From: Parasitella parasitica NRRL 2501
Lineage: Eukaryota > Fungi > Mucoromycota
Direction of reading: 5' to 3'
DNA length: 64,000 nt
Assembly (NCBI GenBank): GCA_025201805.1
Contig: MU619373.1
Location: 1 to 64,000 of the forward strand
Made by a program: the position numbers and the translations under genes. Of the stretch, positions 1 through 38,581 are shown in pieces. Each line of letters starts with the position of its first letter. The stretch's first letter is position 1. The notes below the pieces were generated by a model. That model was given only the letters and a program-made list of their open reading frames with translations. It did not search any database and was not told the origin of the DNA.

Positions 1-580
1 ATCGTTAGATCAACAACGTCAATAAACAACTCAATAATATTCACACTCACGTAAGATTAGAATAGCTACGATAGAATTATCCTATTGACCTGATGAATGA
101 CCATCTCTAATCAACCCAACAAGTAGTATGATAGTTTACTACTAAGCCAGAACGGCTGATTAGAATTCATAACACAACATATAAAGAATAATGGAACGGT
201 TAAGAAATAACGAAACAATTGTCTGCTAGTAAGACGACACTCAAATAATATAAACAGAGATATAAAATAACAGCTTATTGCACATTCAATCTACTTTCAA
301 AATAAAGAAGGATTTTAATCGTATCTTGCTTTTTTACACTTTTTACTGCATTTCGCTGCAGAGAGGTCGCCATGACTCCAAATCAACTCGTATATTCTTT
401 AAATCACCTAAGCTATCACAACCAGTGCTTATATTGCAATCTAGTTACTTTGATAAATTACGTTAAAAACCTTGATCATCTTGCTATGCACATTTGAACA
501 GCTTAATGTGCCCATATTTTTCTATTATGCCCATTTGTGCATATTATTATACCCATGGGAATACTACTTCGGCCGTAGTG
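1..580. mobile_element. Terminus of a CACTA/EnSpm-type DNA transposon (element probably extends left of the window)
   Basis: The minus strand from 580 reads CACTACGGCCGAAGTAG. Three subterminal 12-mer repeats follow (TAATGTGCCCAT 504-515, TATTATGCCCAT 523-534, TATTATACCCAT 545-556). The LINE ORF2 runs into this terminus and stops 10 codons later. Confidence 0.65.
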
Positions 581-1569
581 GAACTATCCAAAGATTGGTA
601 CAAACATTGATTCAAAGAATCGTTGAGTGCATCAATATCTGGACGAGAACCAGGAGGAGCAGACACCAAACCAGAGAGTTCAACAGCCAAAGGAGCAACA
701 GAAGACCTAAAGAGGGCTCGATATACACCCAAAGGCTTTTTCTTACCCAACTTAGATAGCTTCCACTGCCGTCTAGGAGCAACACCAGAATCACCAGAAG
801 CCATAGAATCCCCAGGAGGAGCCACATACTCGAAGGTAAGTACCAACAATCGATGATCAGAGCTAAGGGACAGATCAGATTCGACCACCAACTGAGGGTT
901 TACCATACCAGCCTCACCAATGTTTGTCAAGAAGAAGTCAATGATACTACTACACTCCCGCTGCTGACGGAAGCTAGAGTATGTTGACACACCAAAAGCC
1001 AAAGACGTATTTAAATTCCTGAAGCAATACTCATCCAGCCAAGGCTTTAGAGCAGTACCACGAGGAGTTGCCACAGTATCACCAGTAAAAGAACCCATCC
1101 GAGCATTGAAGTCACCGCAAAGAATAGTATCCCTAGTTAAAGGTAATGAACTGAGAGCCGAGAGCACCCTATCAGTTGATAGGGGTGGAGGAAAGTATAC
1201 ACAGTGTACTGTCAGGGCGCCAACCCTTAAGGACAAAGTATGCGGATTATAAGATGGAAGTTGATAGACTGAAAAAGGACAGGAAGGAGAGACAAAAGCA
1301 GTAATACCACCAGAACCACGGTTGAAAGCACCAGGTACTTTGGAGCCATAGAGATGATATTGAGACCAGTCTGTAGGAAAGGATCCAGAGGTAAGCCAGG
1401 TTTCAGTAACTATTAGAACATGAGTGCTGAGAGTGTGAGACAGAACATCATGAACTACTGATTGGCGAAGACCATTAGCATTCCAGAGAGAGAGAGAGAC
1501 AAATAAGGAGTGGACAGGGTTGTTGTTATTATTATACAGTATCGGTGAATCAGTAATGGAAGAACACAT
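547..1569 (-). pseudogene. LINE ORF2, AP-endonuclease (EEP) domain; truncated before the reverse transcriptase
   Basis: Motifs LWNANGL, IVTETW, GSGGI, ILCGDFNAR, SIIDFFL and LSSDHR are canonical for retrotransposon APE. The last ~10 codons come from the CACTA terminus. Confidence 0.88.
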
Positions 1570-2701
1570 TATTGTTCATCCATATCGGACACACTAGGAT
1601 CCTCACTTGGATCATTGAGCTTACGACGAAACAAGAAGTCGGCCTTCTTGGGTTCCTTCTTGGCAAAACGTTGAAGAGCATCCGCAACAGAAACAGAGAG
1701 ATCCTCTTGACAGATCCAGCCTTGATCAACAAAGTAGCGACCAACACCACTGACATTGAGAGGGCGAAGGAAGGTCAAAGTTTGTTGGCAACGAGCAGCA
1801 GTAAACTCAGAAATGAGAGCAGAACGTTCATCAATAGAGAGATCAGCATACTTGGGATCGGCAATGTTAGCAGGATCCAAAGGGTCAAAGTCCTGGATGA
1901 TTTGAGCATCACACTTGGTAGATAACAGATCAATAAATTCCGCAGCGTATTGAACATGAAGAAGAATACCAATTACTTCAGAAGCAGGAAAGCAGATATC
2001 CAGTACACGACCAAGATCCACACCAACACCTCTAAATGTTGAGCGAATTTCAGAACGTTGAAGCTTTCGAGAGCGCCCAATATAGACATATTGGTAGCCT
2101 TGCGGACCTTTAGCAGCAGCAGTTTTGAATATACGACCAGCAGCTAGACGTTTCTTAACTTGTCTAGTAGGATCGGGAAGGTTGGCAGCAGCAGTAGCAA
2201 TCTGACTAAAGGTAGCAGGAGTGGCAGAAGTAGCACCATTAGTAGCAGCAGTAGTTTTGGTGAGACGTTTTGAAGAACCAACTTCCCCCCTTTCGCTTTG
2301 AGCTCCTTTGATGTCACGTGATCTAAGGCTTGTAATTTCCAGATCCTTCTGTTGTAAAAGGTTTTTCAGTTCAGTATTCTCTTTTTCCAACATATCTAGA
2401 CGCGACAGTATCCCATCATGTTGATTAACTCGTTCAGTAACTGAAGTAAGTTGTTGTTGGAGTTGTTGCAGTAGCAAATGTAGTTGATTCATGTCCATAA
2501 TTTGTAGATTATCAGTCATGGTTGATAAAATATATTTTTTATAAATTTAAAATTTAAAAAAAAATATGAAGCAGTTGTTCGACAAGGCTAAAACTATAAC
2601 ACAAGATACTACTCTAATATAAGGCAAGTATATTGGTATAATTTCGAGTTGATTGCGTTGCTGACTGTCGAGAAAATACGTTTTTTGTTGAAGTGAAAGT
2701 G
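581..2701 (-). mobile_element. Non-LTR (LINE-type) retrotransposon, 5' part, interrupted at 580
   Basis: ORF1 plus an APE-endonuclease ORF2 in tandem. The 5' boundary (~2701) is inferred, not proven. Confidence 0.85.
1569..2519 (-). CDS. LINE ORF1 (coiled-coil plus putative RNA-binding domain)
   Basis: Intronless 316-aa ORF with an N-terminal coiled coil and a YQYVYIG...RVLDICFP...GILLH block. It lies directly upstream of the APE ORF, and its TAA overlaps the ORF2 ATG. Confidence 0.8.
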   Translation of the reverse strand: MTDNLQIMDMNQLHLLLQQLQQQLTSVTERVNQHDGILSRLDMLEKENTELKNLLQQKDLEITSLRSRDIKGAQSERGEVGSSKRLTKTTAATNGATSATPATFSQIATAAANLPDPTRQVKKRLAAGRIFKTAAAKGPQGYQYVYIGRSRKLQRSEIRSTFRGVGVDLGRVLDICFPASEVIGILLHVQYAAEFIDLLSTKCDAQIIQDFDPLDPANIADPKYADLSIDERSALISEFTAARCQQTLTFLRPLNVSGVGRYFVDQGWICQEDLSVSVADALQRFAKKEPKKADFLFRRKLNDPSEDPSVSDMDEQ

Positions 2702-2749
2702 TTTCTACCAGGATAGGGTGGCAAAAAGTGATGGAAAAACGAAAGAGAT

Positions 2750-2822
2750 GCGGGTATAGCTCAGCTGGGAGAGCGTTAGACTGAAGATCTAAAGGCCAAG
2801 CGTTCGATCCGCTTTACCCGCA
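2750..2822 (+). tRNA. tRNA-Phe (GAA), intronless
   Basis: Acceptor stem GCGGGTA/TACCCGC, D-arm GCTC...GAGC, anticodon arm TTAGA-CTGAAGA-TCTAA, T-arm AAGCG-TTCGATC-CGCTT; 73 nt. Confidence 0.97.
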
Positions 2823-2827
2823 ATAGC

Positions 2828-2832
2828 TTTTT
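2828..2832 (+). terminator. RNA polymerase III oligo-T terminator of tRNA-Phe
   Basis: TTTTT 5 nt downstream of the discriminator base. Confidence 0.75.
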
Positions 2833-3169
2833 AACAAGCTTCAAATCAGTGGTGTCTTTAGTGCAGTTGCAATTGTAGTTTGATAAATTTTATATCACGT
2901 ATAGATGCTTTGGTATTGTTGTAATTGATTTCATCTTTTGCTTTAACGTGGCAAATAATAAATAAGTTTTTATAGAAAATTTAGCAACGGCAGATCGATC
3001 TATAATAGTAGTGAGCACCAGCAGTTTTACAGCTGTTATCCAACTTAATTTTTGTTGTGGCAGACAGGTGGTGATTTATCAGAATGAGAAATTATTCAAA
3101 TAAAACGGTTGTGAATTAATCAAGTAAAGATCTCGTTTATTACATGGAAAAAATGATGGTTTATATACT

Positions 3170-3920
3170 AGTGAATCTAAGTGGACTGATGGGAAGATAA
3201 GATACAAGTGTGAGACATGGTGTGATTTAGAGAATGGAACGATAGATCGTATCTATTGTCCATGAACATGTCATGTTGAGTTATAAATAAGGAACATGAT
3301 TCATTGGGATATGTTCCTGAATTGTGTTCAGGATTGAGTTTACTTGAGTTTGACTTCCGGTTGGGAAATTGACACATCAGGTGGTATGAGATTAAGCAAT
3401 TATTAGATGATTGGTAATTCTTTGTATACAATGTACAGTATCACAAATGTAGTTTACTTGGAATGTAATACCAAGTTCAATGTCTGACCATGACGATAAA
3501 AAGCGTTACAATAGATATAATATAATATAGTAGTCAAGCTTCTTCTTGTGAAATTACTAGTAAAAAAATATACAGAAAAAATACTTTCTAAAACTGTTAT
3601 TTATATTTAGATGAAGCTCATCAAAATGTCATTTAAAAACTATCGCTTTATACTAGTTTTCCAAGGGTAAGATTATAAATATGAACTTAAATTATATTGG
3701 ATTATTCATCTTCTAGGACGTCTTGGCAGCAAGGATTGATAAAGAGATAACGAATGGCGGATTTGACGAGTGTTGGAGTTGTTTCTATTTGTTCTTGATA
3801 TTGGATTACGTCTTCTTAAATCCATGCTAGCCTGGTCTTGATGATTGTGATCTTTGTGGAATATGTTCTGCCAGTGTCAAAGGGCGCAGCGTAATGTTTG
3901 CAATCAAATTGGGATCAATT
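3170..3920 (-). pseudogene. Possible decayed third paralog of the Hda2/3-like genes
   Basis: Translated fragments occur in the same order as in the intact paralogs (ITLRPLTL, EDVIQYQEQI, IRYLFINP, LGKL, ELHLNIN, LGITFQV, HLIIA*, VPYL*L), with many stops and frameshifts. Confidence 0.35.
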
Positions 3921-4578
3921 TTATGTGAAAATAAAAAAAGTAAAAAAATAAAGCCAGAGAAATACAATTATAGTATTTCCACCTTTATTTTCGATTGAAA
4001 GAAAACTGAAGAAAAGATACATGCTCTTTAAGAGAGCTTGTATTTATACTACTTGTAAAATTGCCTCACTACAGTGAGAATGCTTATTTTAGAGCTTATT
4101 TGAAGAATAACTTTTGTTGACATTCTCTCACTTGTATTGTAGTTAAGATTTCGATATGTTGGTATTGAAATTGATACTATGGTTTTGGGCAGGATTGTAA
4201 TACTTGAGGATCCTGATTATTTCTAATGCGACTGAGCTTTCCTTATTGTGTAATAAACAAGCCATTTCTGGCATCTAGAATTATTGCAATTGTTATAAAA
4301 CAATTGCATTGTTTATACATGTTTGGAATTTGTTTATTTGTGATTTTATGAGCAGCGTTGTTCAACATTAGCATGTGCCAGGGTTGTAGGAGATTGTACT
4401 TTGATCAGGAGTGCAAGCTTCTACCAACACTTGTTAATGTTTACTTGTGCTTTTCATGTATTTCTTTCTTGGATGGATCAGCCATGTTCCATCTGGATTT
4501 TATTTTAATGTAATTGTGGTGCCATATAATGGGTGCCATTTTATTACAATGCTATGTAAATATGATTTGTATAAAGTA

Positions 4579-4842
4579 ATAAGGCTTTTCTGAATAAAAC
4601 CAGATACAAAACTGAAGAATTTTATTGACATAAGATATAATCTCTAGTTATACTAAAAAAATATATCCCAATCAATGTTTATCCACATAACATCTGATGT
4701 TTGACAAGAAGTGTCAAACCTTATTAAATCACAGCATTTCCAGGACAGACCCATCTTTCTATTTTACATTAAAGAAAAGATTGGGTAGAATGTCTTCCCG
4801 ACATCCCGCGATCTGATCTAGATGTATTCTTTGAATAAGCCA
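4579..4842 (+). repeat. Dispersed repeat module A, copy 1
   Basis: Aligns by eye with the reverse complement of 37618-37886 (shared blocks CTGAATAAAACCAGATACAAAAC, TTTGACAAGAAGTGTCAAA, CCCGACATCCCGCGATCTGAT). Confidence 0.85.
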
Positions 4843-5284
4843 GGAACCTTGCAAGAGGTCCAATTACAACTTGTATAGCTTATTCCTTATTTGTAAAAGA
4901 ATTACCAACAATTAATATCGTGATCCGTGCATTATGACTAGGTTAGATATGATATACTTCTAGCCTTTATATGGATACAACAAAATATTCTGGGGTAATT
5001 TGAAGTTCATATTCATACTATTTACGGAAATTCTTTTTATGTAATGATCAGTTTATACTGATCTATAACAATAAGGCATTCCGTCAGTTTTTTCCCTCGT
5101 CGTATGGCCAAAGAGAAATACCTATAGATAGCTAAAAAAATTCGCATTCAATAAAAATATATTATGCGTTTTTCAGCGAACTTCAAGGGTAATTCTGACG
5201 AAATTGAAATTGAGATTTCACGAAATAAAAATTTAATCGGCGGAATTGTCCTCAAAATACAGTAACAATTATACCAATTCCACA

Positions 5285-5548
5285 GATATCAGTGATGTAT
5301 CAATTCTAAAACCGGATGTCAATATAATATAAACTCGTACTGAAGAGTAAAACATCAGATCATAAAATAATATGACATGACATTTGGGATAGATACAATC
5401 TACCCTATCTCCCGGATCTCATCACTAAAACCTTTATCCTCACATCGCTTCCCTCAGTTCATAAAAAGTATATCAACCCTCTATTTTTGAATGTAATAAA
5501 CGGATATTTACATAATTAACTTCTATTTGAATTTTTCTGATAAATCAA
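5285..5548 (+). repeat. Dispersed repeat module B, copy 1
   Basis: Aligns with the reverse complement of 38355-38581 (shared blocks CTAAAACCGGATGTCAATA, TGGGATAGATACAAT, AACCCTCTATTTT, TTTTCTGATAAATCAA). Confidence 0.8.
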
Positions 5549-7253
5549 TCACCAATTTACATATCAGAATTGCATCTAATCCATCATACGCTTCCATAAA
5601 AAGCAAATAAAACCCTATCTTATGCGCCATAAGTACAGGCATAATCATCGCTATCTGAGCATAACTTGCTTTCCACTGGGCAATGTCTCTATCCAAAGTT
5701 ATCTTCAAAAACACCTTCGCGTTTTTGATTTCGGAGTTTAAAATAAACCACGTGGTTTGCGGAGGTTTAATTTGCTTTTGTCTTCAAATGTAGTAAATAT
5801 TTGCGCTGGGCTGACAATTTTCGAATAAGTAATATTATTTTATACTGAGATCTGATGTTGGAATAAGGGTTTAGCCATCATTGGCGAGCACCATAAATCC
5901 TTAAACAAGATATCAAATCAGTTTAAATTCATCTGAGGAGTAAAATATCTGATCATAAAATATATTTCAGCATGGTAATAAAGATAATGTGTTATGACAG
6001 TAAAAGGTACCATTTCATTGCACTTGCGTACAAAAACATTTTTGATTTTCATAATTTTAAAATCTTACAATTTTTGTCAAAGAAACTTTAGTAACGCGAT
6101 AGAACCAGAAAAACACAGCGACAACTCACAGCGCTATGGAATAAAAGTATTTCTATTCACGAAAATATCATTAGTATCAATAAAGTTACCAACAGAAATG
6201 AGAAATTAATAAAGACGACTATTAATTCACCAGATACAAACTACTAATGTCATTGATTAGTTAATAAAAGGTTATCTTTCCGTTTAGAATAAACTCTTAT
6301 GAATTAATCTATGAATACAATCAGATAATGTTTGGCATTTAACTGTCAAATAAGCTTATGATAACGCAGTATTAGTCAGAGCAAGACTTATATTTAATCA
6401 GCTAAGTAAGACGAATGTGAATCATTTATCGATAAGTTTAGCCTCGTAATTTAGAAAAAGTAGAATCCAAACAGTTGGTTTCTAATACAAGACATTCCAT
6501 GCTTATTTCTATTATCATAAAAGAACCGGTGAGATTTAATCTTAGATCTGATCAGGGACGGTTGCCATGACAGCAGTTTTGTGTCCATAGAATACAGTGG
6601 TAGTCATCTTCAACAATAATAGCGTTATTTTCTGAGCAACTAAACACTTCAAAACGAGATTTTGATGGGTAGTATTTGTATAATATTATTTTACTTACTC
6701 TTAGTTTTCACATAAGAATTGCATATAAGCATCTATGTCTTTTTATGAAGAACAAAGGAAGGCCTGGTTTAGGCTTGTTGATTAATACAGGCACGATTAG
6801 GACATTCTAATGAGTATTTAACTCCTACAGCATATAGCAAAATGTGTATCAAAAGTTAAAGAGGTCTAATACTGTAACTACCAAAATAAATCCATTACAT
6901 CTCTAGTAGTTACTCTTTTTTTCTTTCTGGTTCAAGGTTCCTTTACTTGTACATGACGTTCACTAGGCCATATTTCTCAGCCTCTTCAGACTGAAATGCG
7001 AGCTTGGATATCCACAAAACAATAATGATCGCAGACCTCTCTTCGTTTTAAAAAGAGATACAAGCCTGCTGTAACCAATTGTTTGTCTTTGTCTTTGTCT
7101 ATGTAATATTTATCGAAAAGACGAGACTCTATAAATTCACGTACCAGATAATATAACCCAATCAGGTCATACTCTTCCAGGCTCGGTCACAGATTGATAA
7201 TTTATCATGTTTTCATTTCTCGGTTCCCTTTTTTGCTTTATCCTGCAAGCACA

Positions 7254-8321
7254 ATGAAAGGCCTTCATTTTCTTGACTCGAGCACAGTGCCAACAAATTG
7301 TATTCCTATCTGCCCATCCTTTCAGCAGGTGCTCAGTATTGAAGAAACACTACATAGTATCCAGAAAAGAGGCGGTATACTGAATAATGTCAACTCTGAA
7401 ACGTTAGTTTCTGGATTAGATAAAATTGCATCTGGTGTCTTGAAGTTTTCCAGTTTTGACATGAGCCCTGAAATGGAATGCTTGAGTGGTAAGATGTATT
7501 TTGTTGTTGAGTTTTTAAGACAGCTCGAGTATCGTAAACTGGTAAGTTATACACATGAAACATAAAAAAAATAACATTAGTAGATTATTACACAATAAGA
7601 ATTTGATCAAGAATTTTTGCTGTAGTTGTCGATATGTACTGATATTATTTTGATTTAGGGCTACTGTATTGTTAGCATTATTACTAATCGTTCAGATGTT
7701 GAAGAAGCTCTGGTAAAAGTATTAACTTACTACATATCTTCTCAAATTGTTCGTATTGAAAATTTATCGGTGGAAGGATATGCTGACGGTATATTCGTCG
7801 GCGGTGTCACTGTTCATATTAAAGTAAGATATTGTCCGTGTGTAATCTGATCTAATCATGAACAGTTGATTTTCTTATAGTCAGATTCAGATCAGCAAAT
7901 CAACCAAACTGCACAAACTGACCTTCTTTTATTATACGATGCGGATTTGATGGGTGCCAATATGACTCGAATCTTTAAGAGAGTAGCTTTCGACTGCAAC
8001 CCTGCGATACTATATCTGTCAACATTTAGCTCACCAGAATCTCGCTGCCGTGATTTTTACAATGTATTTACAAAAAAAAACTATATCGATCCTCACACTC
8101 TCGACTTCGATGATTTCTTAAGTGAAAATGCGACGGATATGTTTCACGTACTTATGCATGAGAATGATATATTCACTGATCAAGAGTTCATGCTTTGGAA
8201 TGATAGTATTGCTCAACAAGTCCTCAATTGGTTTATTTCTGGTCATGATATTGATTATAAATTCGACGGTCTACTGTTTCCATGCGATGTTCCCTCAAAA
8301 TTCTTCCACCCACCTCAATAG
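7254..8321 (+). CDS. Hda2/Hda3-like (SF2 helicase C-lobe-like) domain protein, paralog A, ~297 aa
   Basis: Exons 7254-7541, 7659-7823 and 7881-8321 join in frame through phase-0 GT-AG introns. Motifs: SGKMYFVVEFL, DLLLLYDAD, NPAILYLSTFSSPESRC, FMLWNDSIAQQVLNW. The gene model is solid; the family call is an inference. Confidence 0.65.
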
Positions 8322-8535
8322 ATCAAAAAACATATACCAGTTGTAGCATAGATGTATATTATATTTCGTAGATATGTAAATAAATCACCAGAACCGGTTG
8401 TTTCTGCTTAAAACTTTCCATGCTTCATCTGCATAAACTTGAACAGTGTATATATCATTTTTATTTGGTTATAAATAAGGCCATGGCAAATGCTTGCGCT
8501 TCTTCCATTTTCCTTTCCGTTTCTGAACCAACAAA

Positions 8536-8955
8536 ATGTGCTATACCTACCAAAATTCCTGTCAACCTACCATGAGAGGCCCTTTGCAGACTAATTACTG
8601 GCGTCTCAAAACAGACGTAGAAGGCTATTCAAAAGAGGTAATGATTGCTTATAACCCTGAGATCGAAACTATGGATTTTGTCGATTATGTCCAATCAAAA
8701 ATTGAACCACTGGGCCTCTTTATTGACTCTATCGTTATCCCTTCCACTCGTATGGGTTCTTGCTTCAACTATAAAATCAAAAATCAAAACCAATATAAAG
8801 CCGCCACAGGAATGACTTCTATTCAAAGTGATCTCTGGAATTCTAGCCGTGGAGCCTCAGGCACCATCATTCTCGATGAAAAACGTATGGAAAACGAAAA
8901 GCGAGCCTCTGACAGTGGCTACTCCTCAAATGATAGCGATTCCAAGTCCAACTAA
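8536..8955 (+). CDS. Small orphan protein (139 aa), possible PB1/ubiquitin-like fold, C-terminal DSGYSS motif
   Basis: Intronless ORF with CAAAATG start context and TATAAA ~65 nt upstream. Confidence 0.6.
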   Translation: MCYTYQNSCQPTMRGPLQTNYWRLKTDVEGYSKEVMIAYNPEIETMDFVDYVQSKIEPLGLFIDSIVIPSTRMGSCFNYKIKNQNQYKAATGMTSIQSDLWNSSRGASGTIILDEKRMENEKRASDSGYSSNDSDSKSN

Positions 8956-9222
8956 TCATTTTTCCAAAAAGTCTGGTATATCTGCATAAATATTTACAAA
9001 AAATAATACGATGATAAATATTTCAAACAATCTGACAAATCTCAAAAATACAATAAAATCTTTTGCAAATTTAACTAGTAAATGATGAATTGGTATGCTC
9101 GAACTGCATTATGCGCAAAACAAAATGCAAAACATGTTTCCATGGTTACAATAATGAACAAAGAATTTAATTTTACAATATATGAGCAAACGATGATTTA
9201 CATGGGAGAAATGAATACTTTC

Positions 9223-10816
9223 TTAAATTTTTACGTTCATACTATTTAGTTGCTCCTCAAACTGTTGCATGGCTTCGTCAAGGATAGAACTAAAATCAAA
9301 TGCTGATAAGAAGCGATCGCTTGTCTTCGATTTCTTGGCTAAGCTGTTTTCCTACAAAAGGAATCAATTCACCCTAATATAAGCATGCTACGCGATATGA
9401 GAGCTTACTTCAACTTTAATAGATCGTTTTTGTCCAGGAGGGCTTAAAATGGAGAGACTTTCATCACTACAGGCCGTACTTGCCGAAGCGTCCATATGAA
9501 CTGATACATTACTTGTAACATTTGTAGTAGAGGCTTCAGAAGTATGCTTTGTAGCAAGATAAGTAGGAAAGGTGGGTGATGGGCTACCAATAGCACCAGC
9601 ATTAGAAGAAGCAGGGGCTTTAGAGGAAGAAATACAGCCTTGTTGTTTCTTTCTCTTCGACCGCTGCTTTACTTTTGTTGGTGCTGAATTTGTTTTAGCA
9701 GCCTGGGGAACAGCCGTCTTCTTGGAAGATGTAAGGCTGCCCGGGGAAGGTTTTTTGGGGGAGTGACTTAAGGGGTGGCCTCCATTCCAGAGGCGATATA
9801 CCTGCATGGGCATGCTTTTCTTTGTAGGTTGGTAAAATATGTATGGTGTGTTATCTTTCTTTGCAGCCCATTCAGCAACCTCAGAAGCAACATAGTTATT
9901 CCAAACTAAAAATGCCTCGAGAGTTGAGCGACGGTTAACCTGATGGAATATGTGCTGGGCAATATCGACATTCTTATACAGAGTGTCCCAGCTTAACTCC
10001 TCGTGCGCAGAGGAACTGTAACAACGAATATCACCAGAATCCAAAGTGCTAATATAGACAACTTGGGGATTATCATAATTAACACCAGAAAACTGGTCTA
10101 ATACTCGATTGTATACATTGATAGCAGAATCATACACCATTACAATGTCGACGCTCGTTGCCTTTTTGATCGTGGTGATCTAGTGGAAAATCGTTGGTCA
10201 TCTTTACTGCTCCATACTAATACACCTACTGGTTTCGCGGCTTTTCTGATTTTAACTATGACGCCAAAAGTATCCCTTTTCACAGGATAAGATGTCAAAT
10301 GATCACAGTTAAGGTTGATGGCCTGAAGGATAGGAAGAAGTTTATTTTGTGATTGCAAATCATTGCACAAGATGGCCACATCCAAGTTCTGATTACACAA
10401 AAAAGATCAGAGTCAAGACAAGGGATGAGGTTTCATAAACTTACAATATTTAATTCCTGAATTTTTTTGAAAAAGCTACCAAGAAAACTTATTTTGCCAA
10501 TGGGTATTTGCGTATCAGAATAAGAAAAGATCCTCAATAGATCGCCAATACTCTGAATTCCCAAATACCCATTGAGTACGTTTGTGAATTGAGATTGATA
10601 GGTTTCCATCTGCTCAACCGAAGCCATAGTAGGAACACACTGTTGAGCGGGAATAGGAGATGGTAGAACTGTGATAGTTTTTGTACGTTTGTAGGACTTT
10701 TGAGTGGATTGGAAAGCTTTCAAGGTCTCTTCTTTGTTAAGCTCGCTGAACTCAACCTTAATAAGGCTGTCTACTGTCATAGATTCCATCTTGACCAAGT
10801 TTAACGAAGCTGTCAT
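9223..10816 (-). CDS. Hda2/Hda3-like domain protein, paralog B, ~476 aa with a low-complexity basic tail
   Basis: Exons 10816-10445, 10388-10230, 10179-9409 and 9351-9223 join in frame through GT-AG introns. Motifs IGKISFLGSFF, VDIVMVYDS, NPQVVYISTLDSGDIRC and FLVWNNYVASEVAEW are collinear with paralog A. Confidence 0.65.
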
Positions 10817-11079: not shown

Positions 11080-12082
11080 TTAAATAAGCATACTCTGAAT
11101 TCCTCTAGTCGTAGTACTTACCCTTCTACTAGCTTCTTCCAATTCTTCTTCTGTGACACAATGGCTTTTATCGTTTGAAGGGATTTCATAGACACCACCT
11201 AAAATGAGGTAAGGGCCATAAGCGAATTCTTTCAAATCTCCCATTTGAGTAACACCAGACAACACAAGGACTGGATCGATTTCAGATGTGATGCCTGCAA
11301 CAATATCAGTATCCATGCGGTCACCGATAATACATGTTTCTAATCTGCTTAAGCCTAGCACACGTTGGGCATAACGCATAATCAATGCAGATGGTTTACC
11401 ACAGTAGAAAGCTTGTGTCTTGGTGACTAGTTCAATGGAAGCAGCAAAAGCACCAGTGGAGGGGATCTTGCGACCTTGAGAATCTAATGTTTCAACATCC
11501 AAGTTGGTGGCAATCAACTTTGCACCTTGTTGAACCAATTGAACGGCTTTGGTGATTTTTTCAAAATTAATAGCAGCTGTTTCACCCAAGACAACGTAAT
11601 CAGGATTGTGATCATTCATGTAGAATCCCTTTTCGTAAAGGGCATAGGCAAGCCCAGGTTCACCAATGACATAGCAAGTGCCGCCATTAGGCATTTGAGA
11701 CTCCAAAAAGAGAGCAGTAGCTTGTCCACAAGTAAAGAAATGATCAGCACCAACATCAATACCGAGACGATGCAACTTTTGCTGCAACTCTTGAGGAGTA
11801 GGAGCAGAATTATTGGTCAAAAAGAGGTACTTCTTGTTGTTGTCTTGCAAAAATTGGACCAATTCCTTGGCTCCAGGTAAGAGATTGGCTCCCTATTAAC
11901 CACTATTTAGTATCCTACGCACTTATTTGACATGCCAAATAATTGCTAACGTGATAAATGACACCATCCATATCGATAATGTAGCCCTTCTTTTGACGGA
12001 TGGCTTCAAGTCTTTCAATATGAAGAACAGGGTCCTTCAAGAGGGCCCATTCTCTAGATAAGTGTTCACCTTGTTGCTGCAT
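11080..12082 (-). CDS. HAD-superfamily subfamily IIA hydrolase (NagD/Pho13-like phosphatase)
   Basis: IIDMDGVIYH motif I, FLTNNS, CGKPS, IIGDRMDTDI, LVLSGVT; intron 11893-11950. Confidence 0.93.
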
Positions 12083-37617: not shown

Positions 37618-37886
37618 TGGCTTATCCAAAGATTACATCAAAATCAGATCGCGGGATGTCGGGGAGACATCTTGCCCACATCTTCTCTCTAATGTAAAAT
37701 AAAAGAAGAGGTCTCTGTTCCTGGAAATGCTGTGATTCAATAATGTTTGACACTTCTTGTCAAATAGTAGATGTTGATGTGGATAAACATTGACTAGGAT
37801 ATTTATAGTATAAATAGAGATCTTATCTTATGTCAATAAAAGTCTTCTGTTTTGTATCTGGTTTTATTCAGAAAAAGTCTTTATTC
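37618..37886 (-). repeat. Dispersed repeat module A, copy 2 (inverted)
   Basis: Reverse-complement match to 4579-4842. Confidence 0.85.
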
Positions 37887-38354
37887 AACATTCCCCGATA
37901 ATAAGCATTCAGCCACTCTTTCCCGAATGGCTATCTTGTTATGACCTGTAGCACAACAAACATATATAATGTTCGACTCTAAACCACACCAATTCTTATC
38001 ATATCTGTAAATGAACATTGAATCATTCATAAAGTATAAAGAGCGGAGCATATCTTCTTGTCCTAACATCTTGACCCTAAAATTTATGTTTAATAAAGTT
38101 ATCAAGTCTCAACTACTCATAACTTCTCCAAATAAAACATGCCCCTAACTTAACGATGTAAAAGAGATCCAAAGGTACATACAAAGTACTAACTTGCCGA
38201 CTCTGAAAAAGTAGCTAGCAACTATCTTTTCCATATAGTAACATATAAGGTTGACAATTCAATTTAGTGTCATCTACCAACAAACACAATGATGAATTTT
38301 AGTCCAATAATTGCAAAAAGCTTTTTATTTGGTGGAATAAGGATATGATGCATG

Positions 38355-38581
38355 TTGATTTATCAGAAAACTTAGATAGAAATTAATCAGGCAAAAATCC
38401 GCTAATTATATTTAAAATAGAGGGTTAATACACTTTTTGCGAACTGGGGAAAGCGATATGAGGTAAATTTTTGGTGTGAGATCCAGGAGATAGAGTATAT
38501 TGTATCTATCCCACATGTACTTTATGATCTGTATTGACATCCGGTTTTAGAGTTGATATGTTTGATCTATATTGTGATATC
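38355..38581 (-). repeat. Dispersed repeat module B, copy 2 (inverted)
   Basis: Reverse-complement match to 5285-5548 with an internal deletion. Confidence 0.8.

What the first reader, a model, noticed from the sequence alone, without database searches (positions are those of the whole stretch)
7254..10816. Tail-to-tail pair of divergent Hda2/Hda3-like genes flanking a small orphan gene in a transposon island
Seen in sequence: five apparently unrelated ORFs splice into two intact genes that are clearly paralogous but very divergent. Collinear blocks are SGKMYFVVEFL/IGKISFLGSFF, GVTVHIK/GVIVKIR, TDLLLLYDA/VDIVMVYDS, NPAILYLSTFSSPESRC/NPQVVYISTLDSGDIRC and FMLWNDSIAQQVLNW..YKF/FLVWNNYVASEVAEW..YIF. 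Intron 1 sits at the same position in both, 17 codons after the G of GK. Established: yeast Hda2 and Hda3 heterodimerise. Their N-terminal domains resemble the second lobe of SF2 helicases and bind DNA, and their long C-terminal coiled coils scaffold the Hda1 deacetylase complex. Inference: these proteins carry that domain but lack the long coiled coil. A physically linked pair beside TE debris could be a heterodimeric chromatin module, such as a decoy or anti-silencing cassette carried by mobile DNA, or a fast-evolving host defence locus.
Basis: partly seen in the sequence, partly recalled or inferred. Interest (0 to 1): 0.8.

Follow-up and report, generated by a model that had tools for sequence, protein, structure and literature searches.

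The report
Ccq1/Hda3-like gene pair in pin moulds
Two neighbouring pin-mould genes encode motor-less halves of a chromatin-remodelling enzyme, of a kind described in the papers I found only from budding and fission yeast gene-silencing and telomere complexes; they are ordinary inherited host genes, not transposon cargo, and they reveal an undescribed Mucorales-wide family.

Summary
The two spliced paralogues are real (Parasitella parasitica). The fold guess is right: an SNF2 lobe-2-only domain with no lobe 1 and no motifs V/VI. The best structural match is fission-yeast Ccq1 (Z 14.3), then Hda3 (11.9). The mobile-cassette idea is refuted. Genes A, C and B are single-copy, under purifying selection, and sit next to the same housekeeping HAD gene in five Mucor species and a second Parasitella; A and B occupy the same locus in Pilobolus. 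The repeats upstream are not found at this locus elsewhere. B→A→C tandem order in M. hiemalis (B→A in Pilobolus) points to tandem duplication and a later inversion. C is conserved and transcribed, not an orphan. B has a fourth exon encoding a conserved amphipathic helix. A third, longer paralogue lies on contig C50; the family is Mucorales-wide. The genome showed no canonical Hda2/3, and its Hda1-like deacetylase lacks ARB2. Caveat: the only RNA run shows A spliced to a cryptic acceptor that gives a premature stop. Most likely these are non-catalytic adaptors of a chromatin-repression or telomere complex; no partner is shown.

The parts
7254..7541 (+). Gene A exon 1 (96 codons; ends with the SGK helix of SNF2 lobe 2)
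7542..7658 (+). Gene A intron 1, phase 0, same position as B intron 1; bin depths suggest it is partly retained
   Evidence: joint skips 117, GT..AG
7659..7823 (+). Gene A exon 2 (55 codons)
7824..7880 (+). Gene A intron 2. The conserved acceptor is 7880; the RNA contig uses a cryptic AG at 7865, absent from the second Parasitella, giving L-I-F-L-stop
7881..8321 (+). Gene A exon 3 (146 codons plus stop); the domain-only protein ends here, 297 aa
   Evidence: dN/dS 0.22
8536..8955 (+). Gene C, single exon, 139 aa, no known family; conserved in Mucor and Parasitella, weakly in M. hiemalis; ends in a conserved DSGYSS motif
10445..10816 (-). Gene B exon 1 (124 codons)
10230..10388 (-). Gene B exon 2 (53 codons)
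9409..10179 (-). Gene B exon 3: rest of the domain plus a basic S/T/P/A-rich linker (dN/dS 0.78)
9223..9351 (-).
11080..11862 (-). HAD-type hydrolase gene (main exon), the constant neighbour of gene B
2830..7180 (.). Mosaic of dispersed repeats upstream of gene A (3899-4550 has more than 30 copies); not part of the conserved locus
547..2745 (-). LINE 5' part (ORF1 plus endonuclease) cut by the contig end, 3 nt from tRNA-Phe 2749-2823; unrelated to the gene trio

Best explanation
A and B are vertically inherited host genes made by tandem duplication of a Mucorales gene that encodes an ATPase-dead SNF2 lobe-2 domain of the Ccq1/Hda2/Hda3 type. SHOWN: the fold; the loss of lobe 1 and of motifs V/VI; shared introns; single copy; synteny; purifying selection; a third paralogue on contig C50. 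The order B→A→C in M. hiemalis (B→A in Pilobolus) against B→ ←C ←A here indicates a later inversion of A-C. INFERRED: they are non-catalytic nuclear adaptors of a chromatin-repression complex. The domain would bind DNA or nucleosomes (as Hda3's does) and/or an amphipathic partner helix in a groove (as Ccq1's binds Tpz1). B's basic linker and C-terminal amphipathic helix would stand in for the long coiled coil as the dimerising or enzyme-recruiting element. Domain-only A would pair with B or compete with it. The likely enzyme partner is a class II histone deacetylase, but not through the yeast ARB2 clamp, because none of the three class II HDAC genes found here shows ARB2.
For: Fold: B core model pLDDT 93.5; VIA-align ranks Ccq1 7cuj Z 14.3 (rmsd 3.6, 201 aligned), Hda3 11.9, ALC1 11.3, most other SNF2s 10.8 or lower. 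An A-orthologue model also ranks Ccq1 first, Z 9.9, from a low-confidence model. The family profile hits Hda3 first. 17 of 48 members hit PF11496 below its cut-off, and none hits Helicase_C or SNF2-rel. No GKT, DEAH or motif V, and no SNF2-type motif VI. Synteny. dN/dS 0.15-0.20. Tree: A+B versus the long group, SH-aLRT 100. B's C-terminal helix is conserved and amphipathic. All three characterised members of this domain type serve class II HDAC complexes (PMC7793584, PMC5778466, PMC9333443).
Against: No interaction, localisation or DNA-binding data. The long coiled coil that binds the HDAC in Hda2/3 and Ccq1 is absent. B's helix shows no profile similarity to the long group's coiled coil. Sequence scores for Hda3 and Snf2 are nearly tied, and the long group scores Snf2 first. 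Foldseek gave no match at E 0.001 or better. In this strain no RNA contig encodes full-length A. A is absent at the locus in Gilbertella, so B does not always need a linked A.
Confidence: 0.45

Rival explanations
1. Ccq1-like telomere adaptor: the domain binds the C-terminal helix of a Tpz1/TPP1-like shelterin protein and recruits telomerase or silencing enzymes to chromosome ends.
For: Ccq1 is the top structural hit for both models. The genome encodes POT1 OB folds. The long paralogues have Ccq1's layout: N-terminal extension, domain, C-terminal coiled coil.
Against: 12% sequence identity to Ccq1; Hda3 scores higher by sequence. No Tpz1-like partner was looked for or found. The long paralogue, not A or B, fits Ccq1's layout best.
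Confidence: 0.2
2. Independent half-remodeller: the family arose in Mucorales from a truncated SNF2/CHD gene (as plant MOM1 did; from memory) and works without an HDAC, for example as a regulator of full remodellers.
For: The long-group profile scores Snf2 (E 9e-6) above Hda3 (5e-4). All 27 or so named hits of the whole-library search that I looked up are Mucorales. No ARB2 in the class II HDACs.
Against: Ccq1 and Hda3 align to model residue 271, while most SNF2 chains stop at 198-219. Pfam hits are to HDA2-3, never Helicase_C.
Confidence: 0.2
3. A and B are the direct Hda2 and Hda3 counterparts and clamp an Hda1 dimer as in budding yeast.
For: Two paralogues with the right domain; no other Hda2/3 candidate, since the six PF11496 loci I read are full SNF2 ATPases.
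Against: No antiparallel coiled coils. The Hda1-like gene on C60 stops right after its catalytic domain with no room for ARB2. The A/B duplication appears limited to part of the Mucorales, so it is separate from the yeast one.
Confidence: 0.08
4. One reading: a decoy or anti-silencing cassette carried by mobile DNA.
For: A LINE and many repeats lie within 7 kb upstream; the proteins evolve faster than their neighbours.
Against: Single copy. Same housekeeping neighbours in seven other genomes. The window is collinear with the second Parasitella genome from 7184 on. The usual left neighbours sit at the end of contig C53, consistent with an assembly break. No hit in viral contigs.
Confidence: 0.02
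5. Separate question: gene A is losing function in this strain, because a new cryptic splice acceptor yields mostly truncated 155-aa product.
For: The RNA contig uses acceptor 7865 and intron 1 seems partly retained. That AG is absent in the second Parasitella. No full-length A protein of this strain turned up in the protein searches, whereas B did.
Against: Exon 3 is open and under purifying selection (dN/dS 0.22). Assembled contigs keep only one of two near-identical isoforms. One run only, and its RNA status is a guess (though it shows spliced joints).
Confidence: 0.35

Closest known systems
Schizosaccharomyces pombe Ccq1 (TAD domain, PDB 7CUJ)
   Same: Best structural match for both proteins (Z 14.3 and 9.9); stand-alone ATPase-dead SNF2 lobe 2 with the extra C-terminal helices. 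The third paralogue shares the extension-domain-coiled-coil layout.
   Different: 12% identity. A and B lack the 235-residue coiled-coil region that dimerises Ccq1 and binds Clr3 (PMC5778466), and the N-terminal Est1-binding part. Three paralogues here against one Ccq1. No Tpz1 partner shown.
Saccharomyces cerevisiae Hda2 and Hda3 (Pfam PF11496; PDB 3HGQ, 6Z6F)
   Same: Same domain (profile E 3e-7 and 2e-5; Z 11.9 for 3HGQ, 8.9-10.9 for the complex chains); a pair of paralogues.
   Different: No 147-173 angstrom antiparallel coiled coils (PMC7793584). A and B themselves do not hit PF11496. The Hda1-like partner lacks ARB2. The duplication looks independent, and the genes are physically linked.
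SNF2-family remodeller lobe 2 (Snf2, CHD4, ALC1, LSH)
   Same: RecA-like lobe 2 with the SGK helix and the strands around motifs IV-VI (Z about 8-11; profile E 1e-6).
   Different: No lobe 1, no Walker A/B, no motif V glycine loop, no motif VI arginine fingers, so it cannot be a motor.
Plant MOM1 (from memory, not tested)
   Same: A silencing protein that kept only half of a SNF2/CHD ATPase.
   Different: Very different size and architecture; no comparison was run.

Membership tests
Hda2/Hda3 (HDA1 complex subunits) | N-terminal domain resembling SF2/SNF2 lobe 2 without ATP-binding motifs | tested here: met
Hda2/Hda3 (HDA1 complex subunits) | Pfam PF11496 above the gathering score | tested here: not met
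   No hit for A orthologue or B even at E 10; 17 of 48 relatives hit below cut-off, best E 4e-5
Hda2/Hda3 (HDA1 complex subunits) | Long C-terminal antiparallel coiled coil | tested here: not met
   A ends with the domain; B has a low-complexity linker and one helix of about 20 residues
Hda2/Hda3 (HDA1 complex subunits) | Partner Hda1 with ARB2 domain in the genome | tested here: not met
   Class II HDAC on C60 ends after the catalytic domain; those on C7 and C105 have a Tudor/MBT-like N-terminus and no ARB2 seen; the PF09757 search was blank but is weak evidence alone
Hda2/Hda3 (HDA1 complex subunits) | Heterodimer that activates a deacetylase and binds DNA | not testable with these tools
   No multimer prediction or assay available
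Ccq1 (fission-yeast shelterin/SHREC adaptor) | HDAC2/3-like TAD domain | tested here: met
   Top VIA-align hit for both models
Ccq1 (fission-yeast shelterin/SHREC adaptor) | C-terminal coiled coil for dimerisation and Clr3 binding | tested here: not met
   Absent in A and B; a coiled coil of about 45 residues is present in the long group
Ccq1 (fission-yeast shelterin/SHREC adaptor) | Binds Tpz1 and localises to telomeres | not testable with these tools
   POT1 domains exist in the genome; Tpz1/TPP1 not searched
SNF2 ATPase | Lobe 1 with Walker A/B, and motifs V and VI in lobe 2 | tested here: not met
   None in 48 family members; two loose regex matches are not the SNF2 motif
Transposon-borne cargo cassette | Several copies or changing neighbours, bounded by element ends | tested here: not met
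   Single copy, conserved neighbours

The most novel reading that the evidence does not exclude
Mucorales carry an unrecognised three-member Ccq1/Hda2/3 family that shares ancestry with the yeast proteins, which would date this HDAC/telomere adaptor to before the Mucoromycota-Dikarya split. The linked A-B(-C) genes form their own complex, in which B's terminal amphipathic helix docks in the groove of A's domain as Tpz1's helix docks on Ccq1, and which works with ARB2-less class II deacetylases: a silencing architecture unlike HDA1 or SHREC.
Probability: 0.25. Interest if true: 0.7.

Novelty: new variant of a known kind. Interest (0 to 1): 0.5.

Why it matters
A 2021 review states that no Hda2 or Hda3 orthologue could be found outside Saccharomycotina by sequence (PMC8535771), and Ccq1 is called a fission-yeast-specific shelterin part (PMC9333443). 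I found no paper linking either protein to Mucorales; the library misses most subscription journals, and from memory Pfam PF11496 also has members in filamentous Dikarya. A Mucorales-wide family with this fold gives named candidate subunits for class II HDAC or telomere complexes in a group whose complexes are largely unmapped. The orthologues are present in the genetically tractable Mucor lusitanicus, so the question can be tested directly. It is not a new kind of system and not mobile DNA.

Tried and rejected
Pfam on single exons and on full-length B and an A orthologue: nothing. ESM Atlas features for A exon 3 gave terminase ATPase clusters; rejected as a generic RecA-like strand signal, since the fold is lobe 2. 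My early Walker A/B reading of the GK and hhhhD motifs was dropped for the same reason. The first fold, from a 9-sequence alignment, was poor (pLDDT 55); the 48-sequence alignment fixed this for B only. Foldseek gave no match at E 0.001 or better for either model. Viral and metagenome pattern scans: no relatives. Gene C: no Pfam, Atlas or PDB match; a weak p53 hit (E 0.14) is rejected as chance, and a PB1-like fold is only my impression. B's terminal helix versus the long group's coiled coil: no profile match. The careful tree did not finish; only quick trees are used. Window exons were searched by reference, and full-length work used proteins returned by the tools (P0006 for B; orthologues P0008, P0013, P0019 for A). 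The window's own full-length A was therefore never folded or searched whole.

Full report
Observation. The gene models hold. Gene A (+) has three exons, 7254-7541, 7659-7823 and 7881-8321, giving 297 aa. Gene B (-) has four, 10816-10445, 10388-10230, 10179-9409 and 9351-9223, giving 476 aa. All introns are GT-AG and phase 0. B's four exons reproduce the annotated Parasitella parasitica protein P0006, which identifies the organism. The paralogy is real: the third exons match at E 2e-9, full-length orthologues align end to end at 20-27%, and intron 1 lies 17 codons after the G of GK in both.

RNA. The one run available (contigs only) confirms all three B introns and A intron 1, and shows C transcribed at low depth. 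For A intron 2 the contig uses a cryptic acceptor at 7865, which adds four codons and a stop. That AG is absent in the second Parasitella genome, and exon 3 of the orthologues starts at the position of 7881. Exon 3 is still under purifying selection (dN/dS 0.22). Either both isoforms exist and the assembler kept one, or A has recently been weakened in this strain. I could not decide this.

Context. The claim of a transposon island fails. With exon-3 queries and the A+B profile, A and B hit only each other, and C is single-copy. From 7184 the window is collinear for 11 kb with a second Parasitella genome. The order A, C, B, HAD hydrolase recurs in Mucor lusitanicus, M. fragilis, M. ambiguus and M. 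plumbeus, in the first two followed by DUF1358 and the SAM-HMG gene as here. Upstream of A, 2830-7180 is a mosaic of dispersed repeats, preceded by a LINE and a tRNA-Phe gene; the other species have no tRNA here. The usual left neighbours (VTC genes and a 395-aa gene) lie at the very end of contig C53, so the assembly probably broke in the repeats; that join is not proven.

History of the locus. In Mucor hiemalis the order is HAD, B, A, C, all on one strand; Pilobolus has B then A head to tail at the same locus; Gilbertella has B alone. The simplest reading is tandem duplication followed by inversion of A-C in the lineage of Parasitella and the M. circinelloides group, which put C between the two tails. 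C is therefore an old neighbour, not an inserted orphan (66-84% identity in close species, E 9e-9 in M. hiemalis, dN/dS 0.09). A and B change faster than HAD (dN 0.10 and 0.13 against 0.007) but with dN/dS 0.20 and 0.15.

The family. The whole-library profile search gave 81 proteins; every named one I looked up is from Mucorales, including Absidia, Apophysomyces, Fennellomyces, Syncephalastrum, Rhizopus, Backusella and Pilobolus. About two thirds of the hits were not identified. [quoted passage not shown] A and B together are split from the long group at 100. This genome has one long member on C50, whose domain is a single exon, unlike the shared three-exon split of A and B.

What the domain is. 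A and B have no Pfam hit, but 17 of 48 relatives hit HDA2-3 below its cut-off and none hits Helicase_C. The family profile finds Hda3 (E 3e-7), Snf2 (1e-6), Hda2 (2e-5) and Ccq1 (3e-4) among solved structures. A model of B's core has pLDDT 93.5; against 48,161 chains it matches Ccq1's Tpz1-binding domain best (Z 14.3, rmsd 3.6 over 201), then Hda3 (11.9), ALC1 (11.3) and other SNF2 lobes. Ccq1 and Hda3 align to the end of the model, while most SNF2 chains stop some 50-70 residues earlier. A low-confidence model of the M. plumbeus A orthologue also ranks Ccq1 first (Z 9.9). No member has lobe 1 motifs, motif V or the motif VI arginines, so these proteins cannot be motors.

How it most likely works. 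Hda2/3 and Ccq1 both serve class II deacetylase complexes. Hda3's domain touches nucleosomal DNA and the coiled coils clamp the ARB2-bearing Hda1 dimer (PMC7793584). Ccq1's domain holds an amphipathic Tpz1 helix in a groove (PMC9333443) and its coiled coil binds Clr3 (PMC5778466). I infer that A and B are non-catalytic adaptors of a chromatin-repression complex (0.45), with B's basic linker and conserved terminal helix replacing the coiled coil and A acting as partner or competitor. The yeast clamp cannot apply as such: the six PF11496 loci of this genome that I read are full SNF2 ATPases, and the Hda1-like gene on C60 ends right after its catalytic domain, while two other class II genes carry a Tudor/MBT-like N-terminus and show no ARB2. 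Rivals are a telomere-specific Ccq1-like role (0.2; POT1 is present), an independent half-remodeller (0.2; the long group scores Snf2 first), true Hda2/3 counterparts (0.08) and mobile cargo (0.02). No partner, location or activity is shown.

Membership and novelty. The proteins share the defining domain of Hda2/3 and Ccq1 but fail the coiled-coil and partner tests, so I do not file them as either. I found no paper on such proteins in Mucorales, and a review says Hda2/3 orthologues were not found outside Saccharomycotina (PMC8535771). The scan's index held no note with these names.

Limits. As the operators required, I searched the window's genes exon by exon by reference and left out any search or fold of a joined model of my own; full-length work used proteins returned by the tools. 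No multimer prediction was available, gene C was not folded, and read laying could be used once.

Noticed in passing
window 547-2745 (-) and tRNA-Phe 2749-2823 (+): The LINE 5' region lies 3 nt from a tRNA gene, head to head. Of 13 other copies read, four lie 3-4 nt from a tRNA gene (Met, Lys, Lys, Phe; L055, L057, L060, L063), one about 96 nt (L062) and one about 610 nt (L054) away. This points to a tRNA-gene-targeted LINE family.
   Followed up: partly
G000:C50:141184-141945 (L032): Third paralogue of the family (long group, identical in the domain to P0097); it has the Ccq1-like overall layout and may be the ancestral member.
   Followed up: partly
G000:C60 about 158500-159750; C7 about 267000-269000; C105 about 91600-93500: Three class II histone deacetylase genes. 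C60 has a long acidic N-terminal region and no ARB2; C7 and C105 have a Tudor/MBT-like domain fused in front of the deacetylase.
   Followed up: partly
window about 8915-8935 (gene C): A DSGYSS motif, the form of a beta-TrCP/FWD1 phosphodegron (from memory), is conserved in all close orthologues but not seen in M. hiemalis.
   Followed up: no
window 3899-4550 and 4548-4983: Young non-coding repeats of about 650 and 435 bp with many 90-96% copies in the genome; part recurs inverted at 37618-38518 of the window.
   Followed up: no
L019 10715-15485; L020 upstream of 10001: M. ambiguus has a 4.8-kb gap between C and B, and M. plumbeus has different genes upstream of A; the region beside A seems prone to insertions or rearrangement.
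   Followed up: no
L012 6109-7353 and G000:C53 819-2419: A conserved 386-395-aa helical protein with no Pfam family on record is the usual left neighbour of gene A in Mucor and Parasitella.
   Followed up: no
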